Source: Scyliorhinus canicula
Lineage: Eukaryota
Assembly (NCBI RefSeq): GCF_902713615.1
Contig: NC_052159.1
Span: 85,598,520-85,662,519 of the forward strand
Direction of reading: 5' to 3'
DNA: 64,000 nucleotides
Shown: positions 56,690-61,730 of the stretch, in pieces
How the letters are laid out: every line of letters begins with the position of its first letter
How positions within the stretch are numbered: position 1 is the first letter of the stretch
The notes under the pieces: generated by a model
Seen by the model: only the letters and a program-made list of their open reading frames with translations
Databases searched by the model: none
Told to the model about the DNA's origin: nothing
Program-made: the position numbers and the translations under genes

Positions 56690-57775
56690 AGAATCATAGA
56701 ATTTACAATGCAGAAGGAGGCCTTTCAGCCCATTGAGTCTGCACCGGTCCTTGGAAAGAGTACCCTATTTAAGCCCATGGCTCCACCCTATCCCCGTAAC
56801 CCAATAACCCAACGTAACCTTTTTGGACACTAAGGGGCAATTTAACATGGGCTCACTCGTGCCTGACGCTGTGTCACCCCTCACCCCCTCTGGGGGACTC
56901 CCGGAATCGGGCACATCATAATTTTAGTAATGGTCTTTATTATCACAAGTAGGCTTACATTAACACTCCAATTAAGTTACTGTGAAAAGCCCCTAGTCGC
57001 CATATTCTGGCGCCTGTTCGGGTACACAGAGGGAGAATTCAGAATGTCCAAATTACCTAACAGCATATCTTTCGGAACTTGTGGGAGGAAACCGGAGCAC
57101 CCAGAGGAAACTCACGCAGACACTGAGAGAACATGCAGACTCTGCACAGACAGTGACCCAAGCTGGGAATTGAACTTGTGACCCTGGCGCTGTGAAGCCA
57201 TAGCGCTAACCACTATGCTACCATGCTGCCCCACGATTAATTGAAGGTTCTTTTGGTTTTCTGCCTCCATAGATAGTTCAGACAGTGTCCTATTGGGCCC
57301 CCTCCCTCCACCAACACCCCTCCCCTCCCTCACCACCACCCCCCTTTTCCTTCTCTCCCCACTACCCCCTTCCTTTCCCTTCCTTTCCCTTCTGTTGGTA
57401 CAGAGACGAGGGTATCTGGTCTCTCCAGCGCAAGGTTTTGTGCTTGTACTCTTTGTTTTTTGTACAACTGTGTTGTGAACTGTTTTAACAGTCAGAGTAT
57501 CCCACCCCACTGCCAGTTTGATGCTGAGGGGAGGGTGCCCTGTTTCTCCAACACAAAATTAGTGTTTGTACCATTTGGTCTTGTATATATTTTTTACTGT
57601 TTTAATAATAAGATATAGCCAACCCACCTAACCTGCACATCTTTGAATTGTGGGAGGAAACCGGAGCACAGGCACAGGGAGAAAGTGCAAACTCCACACA
57701 GTCACCCGAGGTTGGAATTGAACCCAGGACCCTGGAGCTGTGAGGGAGTAATGCTAACCACTGTGCCACCATACA
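56690..57775 (-). mobile_element. HE1-like V-SINE split in the V-domain by insertion 56851-57614, itself carrying a V-SINE at 56925-57231
   Basis: The SINE halves rejoin at caattta(a/g)cat(g/a)gccaa. Confidence 0.85.
56851..57614 (+). mobile_element. Unclassified retroposon 3' fragment, copy 1
   Basis: 57233-57614 is homologous (inverted) to 61258-61668. Ends aataataagat. Confidence 0.75.
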
Positions 57776-58131
57776 TGGTTTCGGAAACATCCTCAATCTT
57801 TTCGTAGATAGATTTATTTGTGTTATAGTATTTTATATAGTGGTAACATGATGCTAGAAGTGCTTTTAAATGAACCAAGAGTTTGGCATGCACTAGCCAC
57901 AATGACAATTCCCATATTCTGCATTTTCAGTGAGATTTCCTGTGATTAATAGGGCTGAGTTTTTAGGATGGCTGAGACATGTTTTAGTCATCTAAGTATT
58001 GTTGAGAACACCTAATGTTATACTGCCCACTCTTTTCAAAATCTATATAATGCTGGGCTGGTAACTTGCAGTTTCATGTTGGGCACGATTTACCAGCCAA
58101 CGTCCCACCGGCTTCTCCCGGGATTCCCAAC

Positions 58132-58653
58132 TGTTGTGAGAATGAACAGGGTGCAGACTTGTATAGTTGTATAGTTAAGTGAGTTTAGAAACTCACTTAA
58201 CTGTGCTGATGCCAGATCAAACAGAAGAGACTTTGTTTAAAAGTGTCATTTTGAAAACTTAGACTCGAGTTTGGCATGTAAACCATTAAGTGAAAGCATT
58301 ATTGTGAGAGAAGATTTTAATGTGTGTTTTGGGGATTGGAGTTTAGAGAATCTCACGTGGCAATCATCTGGGCGGTGAAATCCACAGACACTAACTTGGG
58401 TTGAGGGCGGGATGTGTGTTTTTGACCCACAATCATCTTGTGTGCTTAATAAGGACTTTTTGTGTTAATGAGATTGTTGTATCATAATGCAATTTTTTCA
58501 TGTTTGATTTTTTTTTCTTGATGTTAAAACTAATTAGTGGTCCTGAGCTCAGTTCCTCCATGTTTTATAAAAAATAAAAGTTACGGTCTTTTGAGCCAGG
58601 GTTCCATTCTGGGATTTTCCCGTCCAGTTATACCACCAATTGGGATCATAACA
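58132..58653 (+). mobile_element. Probable solo LTR
   Basis: tgttgtga...gggatcataaca termini and AATAAA at ~58573. No TSD seen. Confidence 0.55.
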
Positions 58654-58919
58654 GGAGGCAATGTTGTAAAGCTGAGTGAGACTGCAGAAATAAGAGAAAT
58701 GCTGCAGTGAGGGATTTAAACACATGGATGAGAGTTGTAAATTGGAGGGTTTTGGGTGCTCAAGTCAGTAAATTAAATAAAAACAAAATACTGCAGATAT
58801 TGGAGATCTGAAACAAACAATATGTGTTGTAAAAACTTTGATCTGACAGAATCTCTGGAGTGAGAGACAATGGAGAAGTTTTGACTCCACTTCGTAAGTC
58901 TAAAGATATGGGTATGAGT

Positions 58920-59078
58920 GAAGTCATGGTCCCATTATTGAGACTTTCAATTTCTGGTTTAGTCATAAATTTAAATTCCACCAAGTGCTCTGGTGGGATT
59001 TGAAGCTGCATCTCCAGAGTATCAGCCTGGGCTTTCGGATTATTGGTCTAATAAATTACCACTATGCCACCATCTCCC
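58920..59078 (-). mobile_element. tRNA-like head related to the 5' end of the 45961 LINE
   Basis: Reverse reads gggagatggtggcatagtggtaat..gaccaataatcc..caaatcccacca..ggtggaatttaaa. Confidence 0.7.
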
Positions 59079-59389
59079 CATTTTATGGGTGACATCTAGC
59101 ACACCTCACCATACCAAAACTAGCCATTTTACTCCTGTTCAACATTTTTCTTCCGATTCCACTCCATCTCTGTTTCCATCTCAACCCTCTCCTCTTCCCA
59201 TCCACTCTTCCTCCATGCCCTCTCTCCTGTCCTTGAGTGTGAGAAAATAGAAAGTCAGGGAAGGATTCACATTGGGGCATAAACCAAAGTTGGAATAAAC
59301 TTTGATTTCATGAACTAATTGAAATTGCAGCAATAACTAATAGCATTACTGAAACACTCATAATTTTCCTCATAATTTTATACCCAGTC

Positions 59390-60090
59390 CTTCTACACCC
59401 AGACGTGAATGGTGCTGGACAATTAAACAATTCACTGGAGAAGGAGGCTCCACAAATATCCCCTTCCTCAATGATGGAGGAGCCCAGCACATCATTGCAA
59501 AAGACACGGCTGTTGCATTGATAATAATCTTGAGGCAGAAGTGTTTAGTGGTTGATCCATCTTGGTCTCCTCTGGAGGTCTTCAGTATCACAGATGCCTG
59601 TCTTCAGCCAATTCAATTCACCCAGCTCCAACAACACTCAAGAAGCTCGACACCATCTAGGACAAAGCAGTCTGCTTGATTGGCACCCCTTCCACAAACA
59701 TTTACACCCTCCACCACCGGCGAACAGTTGCAGCAGCGTGTACCATCTACAAGATGCACTGCAGATCCTCACTAAAGTTCCTTAGGCAACACCTTCCAAA
59801 CCCACAACCACTACCATCTAGAGGGGTGAGGGCCGCAGATACAAGAGAACACCACCACTTGGAAGTTCCCCTCCAAGTTACTCACCATCCTGACTTGGAA
59901 ATATATCTTCGTTCTTTCACTGTCATTGGGTCAAAATCCTGGGAAACCCTCCCAAATAGCACAGTGGGTTTATATATACTACATGGTCTGCGGTGGGCCA
60001 GGAAGGCAGCTTACCACCACCTTCTCAAGGGCAATTAGGGATTGTCAATTAATGCTGGCCTGGCCAGCGAAGCCCACATCCTGTAAAAAT
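59390..60090 (+). mobile_element. Internally deleted copy of the 45961 LINE family
   Basis: 59390-59620 matches ~48430-48660 and then joins sequence matching ~50390-50855. Confidence 0.85.
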
Positions 60091-61090
60091 TATTTTTTAA
60101 AACTCAGTCTATATGTAATTGGCAATAATAACTGTAACTCTACCTGTAACTGCTAGTAATCCTGTAACCTGCTGATATTTATCCTGAAACTACAACCAGA
60201 ATCTCCTTGCACTGCACAAGTTGTGGTCAGACTCTCCAATTGATACGACTTTTAACATACCCCATCTCTCCCCCTCTCCTTGACTTGGTTTCTGTATGAA
60301 GGTGACAATTCTGGAATTCACACTTGAAAACTGGCCACGCCAACTGGCCTGAACCAATCCAAGAGATCACACAAAGGGCAGTGGCTGCCTCTCGCAGGCA
60401 CATTACCCTGAACTCAACACAGCACCCACATTTCAATACTACTGATAGAAAGAGCAGAAAATGCTGGAACTACTAGAGGGCACCTAAGTCTCTCCCCCCC
60501 CCATCAACCCGAGTACCAAGCCAGAGAAGGACTCCAACAATGCAGAGGCATAGCTTACAGACCCTCGCTTCAACAAATGAAACAGGAATAAACCGACCAC
60601 ACTCGGGCGGCACCACCACTTACTTCCCCTACCCCAATAGCTCTAAAAATACCACCCACAAAAAAGAATCAGAAAGAAACCAGTCCTCTCCGGGATACAT
60701 GATCTGCATAGGCCTTCGCAAGAGACCAGTACGGATTCTCAAAATTCAAAGCCACGGGGAAAAAAAGCAAAATATAAACCCAAAACAATTAGCTGTAACT
60801 GGGGGCTACCCTTTATCCAAGTGAGGCCTAATCTAACCCAAACAGTCACCACCACACTAAACATCCAACTGCCACCCAAGGTGTAGGCCTGCCATTACAA
60901 GCTGGTTCCCGCCCCAGCCATCTCCAACCGTCCAATCAAATAAGGATTGTCTCTGATTCAACTCTGCTTTTCACCACCAAACTCCAACCAGAATCATCCA
61001 GGGACGTAGTGCAAAACATATATCCCAGTGCAAAATATTTATCTCAAAAAAAGATATTTATGGAATGTTTATTAGGATAAAATAAAGGGA

Positions 61091-61494
61091 TGGGCGGCAC
61101 AATGGTGCAGTGGTTAGGACTGCTGCCTAATGGCATGAGGACCTGAGGATCCCAGCCCCGGGTCACTGTCCATGTGGAGTTTTCACATTCTCCCCATGTC
61201 TGCGTGGGTCTCACCCCCACATCTCAAAAAGATGTACAGGGTAGGTGTATTGGCCATATCTTTTTATGAAAACAGTCAAAATATATACAAGGCCAAATGG
61301 TACAAACGCTAATTTTGTGTTGGAGAAACAGAATACCCTCCCCTCAGTATCAACCTATGGGCAGGGTGGTTGGATACTCTCATTATTAAAACAATTCACA
61401 ACACAGTTGTACAAAAAACAAATGGTACAAGCACTAAACTTTGCGCTGGAGAGACCAGATACCCTTGCCTCTGTACCAACAGAAGGGAAACGAA

Positions 61495-61540
<46 letters not shown>

Positions 61541-61730
61541 GGGGGGGGGAGGGAGAGAGAGGTGGGGAGGGAGAGAGATGGGGTTTTGGTGGAAGGGGGG
61601 GGGGGGGACAATAGGGCACTGCCTGAACGATCTACGGAGTTAGAAAAACAAAAGAACCTTCAATTACGATGCTAAATTGCCCCTTAATTGGAAAAAAAAG
61701 AATTGGGTACTCTAAATTTATTTTTAAAAA
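61091..61730 (+). mobile_element. Short-tail V-SINE split in the V-domain by insertion 61258-61668
   Basis: The halves rejoin at ttggccat|gctaaattg. Confidence 0.85.
61258..61668 (-). mobile_element. Unclassified retroposon 3' fragment, copy 2
   Basis: Homologous to 57233-57614. Ends cataaaaagat on the minus strand and contains a long G run. Confidence 0.75.

What the first reader, a model, noticed from the sequence alone, without database searches (positions are those of the whole stretch)
56851..61668. Same retroelement inserted twice at the identical nucleotide of the V-SINE core: candidate SINE-targeting site-specific retrotransposon
Seen: homologous inserts at 56851-57614 (+) and 61258-61668 (-) both lie antisense within a V-SINE. 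Their 3' junction is the same, ...aagat|at(g/a)gccaa, i.e. at ttggccat^gctaaattg of the conserved V-domain. The hosts are different subfamilies (HE1 tail vs short tail), the 5' truncation points differ, the target duplications differ (atgg/atag vs at) and the copies are diverged. This argues for independent insertions rather than duplication or one composite SINE. Established: sequence-specific non-LTR elements target multicopy RNA genes or other transposons (Tx1L into Tx1D, Keno into U2, Dewa into tRNA arrays). Inference: an element using the abundant V-SINE core as a safe harbour. Its clade is unknown because only 3'-UTR-like sequence is present, and n=2.
Basis: partly seen in the sequence, partly recalled or inferred. 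Interest (0 to 1): 0.82.

Follow-up and report, generated by a model that had tools for sequence, protein, structure and literature searches.

The report
Tx1-type retroelement that targets a SINE core
The two inserts belong to a family of at least about 1,000 copies of a Tx1-type LINE derivative that lands, about four times in five, at one exact nucleotide of a very abundant shark SINE, which extends a known "safe-harbour" habit of Tx1 elements to a SINE target.

Summary
The two window inserts, 56851-57614 (+) and 61258-61668 (-), are 79% identical. They are 5'-truncated copies of a roughly 2.86-kb non-LTR element.

In 50 distinct genomic copies whose 3' end I could read, 40 (80%) are joined antisense to the same nucleotide of the SINE core (...GCAATTTAGC(AT)^GGCCAATCCACC...). 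Chance expectation is about 1e-4. The 5' ends vary, both SINE subfamilies serve as hosts, and the outer flanks are unrelated, so these are independent insertions.

Full-length copies carry a 12-14-bp target duplication, and head-to-tail tandem copies occur. Genome-wide, the exact 3'-end 18-mer occurs 511 times, and 222 of these continue with ATGGCCAA.

The element encodes only an ORF1 protein with two RRMs and a CCHC knuckle. Its model's best Swiss-Prot match is the Xenopus Tx1 ORF1 protein (43% identity, E 2.6e-23). No endonuclease or reverse transcriptase remnant is present, so it is probably an internally deleted Tx1 derivative mobilised in trans.

Tx1 elements that target other transposons are already known. 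I found no report of a SINE core as target. I rate this a new member of a known kind, of moderate interest.

The parts
56690..56850 (-). Host SINE 1, 3' half: HE1-like long tail up to ...GGGGCAATTTAACATGG. It forms the 5' flank of element copy 1.
56851..56923 (+). Element copy 1, 5' piece. It matches positions 2484-2558 of the full-length reference copy L052:173-3033.
   Evidence: (92% identity over 75 bp)
56924..57234 (-). Younger SINE nested inside copy 1, flanked by a diverged duplication of about 9 bp (atcataatt / acgattaatt). It is not part of the element.
57235..57616 (+). Element copy 1, 3' piece (3' UTR), ending ...AATAATAAGAT(AT).
57615..57775 (-). Host SINE 1, 5' half: head plus conserved core, ending at the target. 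It forms the 3' flank of copy 1 (atagccaacccacctaacctgcac...).
61092..61257 (+). Host SINE 2 (short-tail subfamily), head plus core up to ...GTATTGGCCAT.
61258..61668 (-). Element copy 2 (reference positions 2549-2861). It contains an expanded G/C-rich tract at about 61497-61600.
61669..61729 (+). Host SINE 2, remainder: ATGCTAAATTGCCCC... and the short tail.

Best explanation
The inserts are 5'-truncated copies of a Tx1-clade non-LTR retrotransposon family. A full-length copy is about 2.86 kb: a 5' UTR of about 1 kb, an ORF1 encoding two RRMs and a CCHC knuckle with a truncated C-terminal part, and a 3' UTR of about 0.6-0.8 kb ending ...TTTTAATAAAAAGAT(AT). There is no ORF2.

Inferred mechanism:
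- The RNA is copied by target-primed reverse transcription, using the ORF2 protein (APE endonuclease plus reverse transcriptase) of a related autonomous Tx1 element.
- That endonuclease nicks the sense strand of the SINE at ...GGATTGGCC^ATGCTAAATTG..., the 3' edge of the conserved SINE core.
- The element therefore ends up antisense to the SINE.
- The second strand is cut 12-14 nt away, after ...CCACC. Full-length copies are thus flanked by (AT)GGCCAATCCACC, while 5'-truncated copies are joined with shorter or no duplication.
- The duplication regenerates the site, which allows tandem copies.

Shown here: the family, its junctions, its duplications, its truncations, the Tx1-type ORF1 and the absence of ORF2 in the copies examined.

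Inferred: trans-mobilisation, the identity of the nuclease, and the exact nick position. The terminal AT is assigned to the element from a single off-target copy.
For: - **Family size.** At least 1373 first-look candidates for the 3' 379 bp. The exact 3'-end 18-mer occurs 511 times. 24 of the 50 sampled copies carry it, which scales to roughly 1,000 or more copies.
- **Site specificity.** 40 of 50 distinct copies are joined to the antisense SINE core; 36 pass the strict alignment score, nearly all of them starting at the same nucleotide, and 4 more (one truncated host SINE, two tandem junctions, one inverted arrangement) were added by eye. Genome-wide, 222 of 511 exact ends continue with ATGGCCAA. 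In the sample the figure is 12 of 24, where 80% are SINE-borne.
- **The SINE is the thing split.** The 5' flank of truncated copies is the other half of the SINE (...GGGGCAATTTAGC...) in 30 copies, at many different truncation points.
- **Independence.** No pair of outer flanks shares 400 bp or more. Hosts come from both SINE subfamilies.
- **Duplications and tandems.** The four full-length copies (L036, L052, L054, L056) start at the same nucleotide, TTGAGTGGCTGCAG, preceded by ATGGCCAATCCACC. Tandem copies sandwiching that duplication occur in L038, L039, L054 and L043.
- **Tx1 identity.** The AF2 model of ORF1 has pLDDT 86. Its top Swiss-Prot match is P14380, the Xenopus Tx1 82-kDa protein, at E 2.6e-23 and 43% identity over 204 residues. 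All other hits are generic tandem RRMs at 15% identity or less.
- **Relatives are full Tx1-like elements.** Relatives of this ORF1 are followed by APE, RVT_1 and zf-RVT, or by the start of an ORF2 (L065). One of them, L064, ends in a (TC)n microsatellite, as the Tx1 family Kibi does (PMC4494074).
- **No ORF2 in this family.** tblastn with APE, RT and C-terminal pieces finds nothing in any copy. The conserved C-terminal part of the relatives' ORF1 is also missing. 25 of 29 copies that contain ORF1 run straight into the 3' UTR.
Against: - No ORF2-bearing copy with this 3' end was found, so the nuclease and its specificity are inferred.
- Only the 40 best-scoring hits per search were scored, and no further genome DNA could be fetched. 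Rare autonomous copies could exist unseen.
- 20% of copies are not in a SINE. Their flanks share little beyond a leading GG, so the length of the recognised sequence is unknown.
- Clade placement rests on ORF1 only. The usual criterion is an RT phylogeny, and there is no RT here.
Confidence: 0.82

Rival explanations
1. Composite or hitch-hiking element. One SINE copy acquired the insert once, and the SINE-plus-insert unit was then amplified, either as a SINE or by duplication or gene conversion.
For: The junction is identical in many copies. The SINE is extremely abundant: 166,261 exact empty sites.
Against: 5' ends differ from copy to copy, and the SINE's other half abuts each different truncation point. 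Hosts belong to two subfamilies with different tails. Duplication length varies. Outer flanks are unrelated. 20% of copies have no SINE at all.
Confidence: 0.02
2. Specificity comes mainly from base pairing rather than from a sequence-specific nuclease. Transcripts of SINE-borne copies would carry a few target nucleotides at their ends (AUGG... at the 3' end, AUGGCCAAUCCACC at the 5' end). These would anneal to nicked SINE cores and so bias priming and 5' joining to the same site.
For: Full-length copies begin right after the 14-nt target string, and truncated ones do not. 6-7 of 10 off-target junctions still read GAT|ATGG. Co-transcription with target sequence is known to sharpen integration of other site-specific LINEs (discussion in PMC4494074).
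Against: In off-target copy L005 the duplication GGACKTCCCTG shows that the GG came from the target, not from the RNA. Two to four nucleotides of pairing cannot give a roughly 5,000-fold enrichment for one site among abundant ATGG sites. Tx1-clade nucleases are the established determinant of target choice (PMC4494074, citing Takahashi and Fujiwara 2002).
Confidence: 0.1
3. Insertion is random, with survival bias. Copies land anywhere, but only those inside SINEs are tolerated and retained.
For: SINE interiors are neutral landing places. The family is fairly old: median pairwise identity is 89%.
Against: Selection cannot produce a single nucleotide position and a single orientation within a roughly 250-bp SINE. 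Most of this 4.2-Gb genome is equally neutral.
Confidence: 0.01
4. The family is autonomous after all. ORF2-bearing full-length copies exist, and the 2.86-kb form is merely the commonest deletion derivative.
For: Only the best 40 hits per search were scored. Copies with an RRM region 57-62% identical that also keep the ORF1 C-terminal domain lie at C9:142878637-142880238, C3:247077210-247079040, C18:56529947-56531654 and C12:17022419-17024171. Many other Tx1-like ORF1 + RT pairs are also present.
Against: None of the ORF1 hits at 60% identity or more lies within 5 kb of any of the 147 RT hits. 25 of 29 ORF1-containing copies pass directly into the 3' UTR.
Confidence: 0.25

Closest known systems
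Tx1-Mar families and SINEU-3 of crocodilians (Kojima 2015, PMC4494074)
   Same: Tx1-clade elements that insert at a fixed position and orientation inside another transposon (Mariner-N4_AMi). They make a long duplication (16 bp) and often form tandem copies that sandwich the duplication. Non-autonomous passengers show the same target preference because they are mobilised in trans.
   Different: The target here is the conserved core of a tRNA-type SINE, not a DNA transposon. The abundant family is an ORF1-retaining, ORF2-less LINE derivative, not a short snRNA-headed SINE. The autonomous partner has not been identified.
Tx1L of Xenopus laevis (targets the piggyBac-type element Tx1D)
   Same: The ORF1 protein is homologous (43% identity to P14380). 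Insertion is site-specific into another mobile element.
   Different: Tx1L has ORF2, and this family does not. The target class differs, and the elements are from distantly related vertebrates.
Keno (U2 snRNA genes), Mutsu (5S rRNA genes), Dewa (tRNA-Leu spacer), Kibi and Koshi ((TC)n, (TTC)n) of fishes (PMC4494074, PMC3706591)
   Same: The same clade and the same strategy of using a multicopy sequence as a landing site. A relative found here (L064) ends in (TC)n, as Kibi does.
   Different: Those targets are RNA genes, their spacers or microsatellites, with tens to thousands of sites. This target has about 1.2 million dispersed copies.
HAL1 (ORF1-only L1 derivatives of mammals); recalled from general knowledge, not tested here
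   Same: A LINE derivative that keeps ORF1 and has lost ORF2, yet reaches a high copy number.
   Different: HAL1 belongs to the L1 clade and is not site-specific.
R2 / R1 of rDNA
   Same: Insertion at a single nucleotide of a multicopy target. R1 also makes a 14-bp duplication (from general knowledge).
   Different: R2 uses an RLE nuclease and has a single ORF. R1 belongs to another clade and targets 28S rDNA.

Membership tests
Tx1 clade of non-LTR retrotransposons | ORF1 protein homologous to Tx1 ORF1 (RRM domains plus a CCHC knuckle) | tested here: met
   The AF2 model has pLDDT 86. Its top Swiss-Prot match is P14380, the Tx1 82-kDa protein, at E 2.6e-23 and 43% identity over 204 residues. 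PDB hits are tandem RRMs. The CCHC columns are near-invariant in 60 homologues.
Tx1 clade of non-LTR retrotransposons | ORF2 with an APE endonuclease, a reverse transcriptase and a C-terminal zinc motif | tested here: not met
   tblastn finds no APE, RT or zf-RVT remnant in any of about 58 copies. Relatives in other genomes have all three. The family is therefore filed as a Tx1-derived non-autonomous element, not as an autonomous Tx1.
Tx1 clade of non-LTR retrotransposons | RT phylogeny grouping with Tx1 reference families | not testable with these tools
Target-specific non-LTR retrotransposons (criterion of PMC4494074: one kind of sequence in more than 20% of flanks) | The same target sequence flanks the copies | tested here: met
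   40 of 50 copies (80%) are joined to the SINE core; of the 36 that pass the strict score, 30 align from the same nucleotide and most of the other 6 differ only by point changes at the first bases. Genome-wide, 222 of 511 exact ends continue with ATGGCCAA.
Target-primed reverse transcription (LINE-type integration) | A fixed 3' end, variable 5' truncation and target-site duplication | tested here: met
   5' ends fall from position 1 to 2614 of 2861. The duplication is 14 bp in full-length copies and -2 to 12 bp in truncated ones.
V-SINE superfamily (the host, including HE1 of sharks) | A central domain shared between SINE families of distant vertebrates | tested here: met
   Two shark subfamilies with different tails share the core, and the block ...AGGTGGATTGGCCA..TAAATTGCCC is nearly invariant among the four copies aligned. 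A SINE in a ray-finned-fish locus (L064) carries ...GGTTGATTGGCATCTCTAAATTG... in the same context. No reference V-domain sequence was available for a direct comparison.
V-SINE superfamily (the host, including HE1 of sharks) | A tRNA-derived head | tested here: inconclusive
   ARAGORN and Rfam find nothing in 56000-62500. The heads begin GGGCAGCACGGTGGC..., as tRNA-type SINEs typically do.
R2-like / RLE site-specific elements | A single ORF with N-terminal zinc fingers or Myb, an RT and a restriction-like endonuclease | tested here: not met
   The only ORF is a Tx1-type ORF1. Its relatives carry APE.

The most novel reading that the evidence does not exclude
The conserved V-domain of V-SINEs may be a long-standing landing pad for one Tx1 lineage. 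On this reading, a sequence-specific APE nuclease reads 12 nt or more of the SINE core. An ORF1-only derivative has outgrown its now rare or extinct master by keeping only its own RNA-binding protein and the 3' UTR. The same target may be used in other vertebrates that carry V-SINEs. That would be the first LINE whose niche is the conserved core of a SINE superfamily, with more than a million sites per genome.
Probability: 0.15. Interest if true: 0.7.

Novelty: new member of a known kind. Interest (0 to 1): 0.5.

Why it matters
- It adds a SINE core to the list of targets used by sequence-specific Tx1 elements. Known targets are RNA genes, microsatellites, DNA transposons and LTR elements.
- It shows the safe-harbour strategy working on a dispersed target of about 1.2 million copies, rather than on a gene cluster.
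- It points to a natural APE-type nuclease with long, precise recognition. Such nucleases are of interest for targeted integration.
- It gives a clean example of an ORF1-retaining, ORF2-less LINE derivative reaching about 1,000 copies or more.
- For annotation of shark genomes, it explains a class of split SINE calls with LINE-like sequence inside.

Tried and rejected
- **Partner element.** I did not try to read genome letters by other means.
- **Coordinate cross-matching.** I compared RT hits, ORF1 hits, ORF1 C-terminal hits and the listed junction places. No ORF2 lies next to any ORF1 at 60% identity or more, and none of the listed junctions (the first 100 of 214) lies near the candidate Tx1-like loci. 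This is inconclusive, because the lists are truncated.
- **Pfam on element ORFs.** Only a sub-threshold zf-CCHC match.
- **Word-indexed protein search.** One hit only, a Scyliorhinus torazame hypothetical protein. Its contig could not be read.
- **Copies that diverge after ORF1.** L053 and L062 carry nested LTR-type gag/protease sequences, not ORF2. L038 and L060 carry an unrelated repeat.
- **RNAalifold on the last 300 nt of 32 copies.** No convincing conserved structure. The tail consists of two diverged units of about 125 nt.
- **tRNA and Rfam scans of the host SINEs.** Nothing found.
- **Literature.** No paper in the library reports a LINE that targets a SINE core. Repbase could not be consulted. 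The V-SINE paper PMC155270 is not held.
- **Earlier scan notes.** Only this same finding was returned.
- **Consensus.** I built no consensus of the element. A single natural copy, L052:173-3033, served as the coordinate reference.
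Full report
**1. The observation**

Window 56851-57614 (+) and 61258-61668 (-) each interrupt a SINE that lies antisense to the insert. The homologous parts, 57238-57614 and 61666-61258, align at 78.8% identity over 410 columns, E 5e-99.

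The 3' junctions read ...AAGAT|ATAGCCAAC and ...AAGAT|ATGGCCAAT. The 5' junctions read ...CAATTTAACATGG|GCTCAC and ...CAATTTAGCAT|CGTAATTG.

One correction is needed. 56924-57234 is a younger SINE nested in copy 1, with its own duplication of about 9 bp. Copy 1 therefore consists of 56851-56923 plus 57235-57616. A full-length reference copy finds no other copy in the window.

**2. A large family with one junction**

The window's genome (G000, 4.22 Gb) gave at least 1373 first-look candidates for the 379-bp 3' piece. I oriented the fetched loci on the element and mapped them to one natural full-length copy, L052:173-3033 (2861 bp). This gave 50 distinct copies with a readable 3' end.

- 36 pass a strict alignment to the antisense SINE core. 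Thirty of them align from the same nucleotide, and most of the other six differ only by point changes at the first one or two bases.
- Four more are clearly at the site: a SINE truncated later (L008), two tandem junctions (L039, L043) and one inverted arrangement (L063).
- In total, 40 of 50 (80%) are at the site.

Exact-pattern counts over the whole genome agree with this.

| Pattern | Count |
|---|---|
| 3'-end 18-mer CTGTTTTAATAAAAAGAT | 511 |
| The same 18-mer + ATGGCCAA | 222 |
| Junction 20-mer | 214 |
| Empty-site 20-mer | 166,261 |

In the sample, 24 of 50 copies carry the exact 18-mer and 12 carry the 26-mer. The genome-wide ratio of 0.43 therefore corresponds to about 70-80% SINE-borne copies and roughly 1,000 or more copies.

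The window has 18 empty sites with three or fewer mismatches in 64 kb, which scales to about 1.2 million sites. The chance rate for that nucleotide and orientation is about 1.4e-4.

**3. Independent insertions by a LINE-type mechanism**

- The 5' ends range from reference position 1 to 2614.
- In 30 copies the sequence abutting the variable 5' end is the other half of the SINE (...TTCCAATTAAGGGGCAATTTAGC...). The SINE is what has been split.
- Hosts come from both SINE subfamilies.
- No two outer flanks share 400 bp or more.
- The four full-length copies (L036, L052, L054, L056) all start at TTGAGTGGCTGCAG, directly after ATGGCCAATCCACC. The same string follows the 3' end, so the duplication is 14 bp, or 12 bp if the AT belongs to the element.
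- Truncated copies have duplications of -2 to 12 bp, mostly 2-5 bp.
- Head-to-tail tandems that sandwich the duplication occur in L038, L039 and L054. L043 carries a second copy of only about 40 bp.

Ten copies lie outside SINEs, and six or seven of their junctions still read GAT|ATGG. In L005 the duplication GGAC(T/G)TCCCTG shows two things: the GG is target sequence, and the preceding AT is the element's last two bases. On that single case, the first nick in the SINE sense strand would be ...GATTGGCC^ATGC....

Median pairwise identity of the last 270 nt or so is 89%. The family is therefore not young.

**4. What the element is**

Longer copies encode one protein. In L035 the frame is open for 582 codons. 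The conserved part contains two RRM-like domains followed by C-x2-C-x4-H-x4-C.

- HMMER against 1.84 billion representatives found 1132 relatives.
- One relative (L064, a ray-finned-fish assembly) is followed by Exo_endo_phos, RVT_1 and zf-RVT, and ends in a (TC)n microsatellite.
- Another (P0013) is followed by a 1291-residue ORF2 with the same domains.
- A third (L065, about 67% identical in ORF1) runs into the start of an ORF2.
- An AF2 model of the two-RRM + CCHC region has pLDDT 86. Its best Swiss-Prot match is P14380, "Transposon TX1 uncharacterized 82 kDa protein" of Xenopus laevis: E 2.6e-23, 43% identity over 204 residues. Every other hit is a generic tandem-RRM protein at 15% identity or less.

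The element is therefore of Tx1 descent.

It has no ORF2. APE, RT and C-terminal queries find nothing in any copy. The conserved C-terminal part of the relatives' ORF1 is absent. 25 of 29 ORF1-containing copies pass directly into the 3' UTR, and the rest are interrupted by unrelated repeats or deletions. The simplest reading is an internal deletion that removed the end of ORF1 and all of ORF2.

**5. The target**

Two shark SINE subfamilies with different tails share the head and a central region. The block ...AGGTGGATTGGCCA..TAAATTGCCC at the 3' edge of that region is nearly invariant among the four copies aligned. After it the tails diverge.

A SINE in the fish locus L064 carries ...GGTTGATTGGCATCTCTAAATTG... 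in the same context. This fits the V-SINE central domain, described as an 80-bp domain shared by HE1, DANA and others (PMC4824008). I could not compare the block with a reference V-domain sequence.

**6. Mechanism**

Shown: single-nucleotide, single-orientation insertion into the SINE core; target duplication; 5' truncation; tandem copies; a Tx1-type ORF1; no ORF2.

Inferred: mobilisation in trans by a Tx1 ORF2 protein whose APE nuclease recognises the core. The second cut 12-14 nt downstream and the microhomology joining of truncated cDNAs are also inferred.

The partner was not found. After no more genome DNA could be fetched, so I could only compare coordinates. Several Tx1-like ORF1 + RT pairs and a set of closer copies with complete ORF1 exist. 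These are listed as next steps.

A weaker rival is that short target-derived ends of the RNA, rather than the nuclease, set the site. The L005 duplication and the size of the enrichment argue against that as the main cause.

**7. Comparison and novelty**

Tx1-clade elements are known for target specificity. Examples are Tx1L into Tx1D, Keno into U2 genes, Mutsu into 5S genes, Dewa into a tRNA-Leu spacer, and Kibi and Koshi into microsatellites. Crocodilian Tx1-Mar inserts into a Mariner element with a 16-bp duplication, tandem copies and trans-mobilised passengers (PMC4494074, PMC3706591).

The present family behaves in the same way. What differs is the target, the conserved core of a SINE with about a million copies, and the fact that the abundant form is an ORF1-only derivative. 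Seven literature searches found no report of SINE-core targeting. Repbase could not be checked.

I rate it a new member of a known kind, with interest 0.5.

Noticed in passing
G000:C15:80.52-80.96 Mb (outside the window; coordinates): Dozens of Tx1-like RT hits with intact open frames (mostly 1161 aa) recur every 5.7 kb or so on both strands. This looks like a young, possibly active target-specific Tx1 family sitting in a tandem repeat array. The DNA could not be fetched.
   Followed up: no
L038:1992-2641 and L060:1923-2555 (oriented on the element): Two copies carry an unrelated repeat of about 630 bp, inserted at almost the same position of the element (about 450 bp into its last 1.57 kb) but in opposite orientations. 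The same repeat is also present in the flank of L008.
   Followed up: partly
L009:1873-2089 and L058:3024-end (oriented on the element): Two of the ten off-target copies abut the terminus of the same short element, which has inverted ends GGGSCGGKATTCTCC...GAGAATCCCGGGC (MITE-like). In L058 the 5' flank is still the SINE half-site.
   Followed up: partly
window 56924-57234 (-): A third SINE subfamily copy with a different, longer tail is nested inside element copy 1 and has a duplication of about 9 bp. SINE activity therefore continued after the element inserted.
   Followed up: partly
window 61497-61600: The C/G-rich tract of the element's 3' UTR is expanded in copy 2 into runs of more than 60 G. 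This tract varies in length between copies.
   Followed up: no
L063, 3' flank of the element: The junction reads GAT|ATGGCCAAT and is followed at once by a complete SINE core in the opposite (sense) orientation. The centre of the target, TGGCCA, is a palindrome.
   Followed up: no
L064:10517 and 12559-12583: Two V-SINE-like copies in opposite orientations are nested inside the ORF2 region of the (TC)n-associated Tx1-like element of a ray-finned fish.
   Followed up: no
L033:8096-8880 (= G000:C18:91743995-91744779): One copy has an internal tandem duplication of about 390 bp in the region just after the CCHC knuckle.
   Followed up: no
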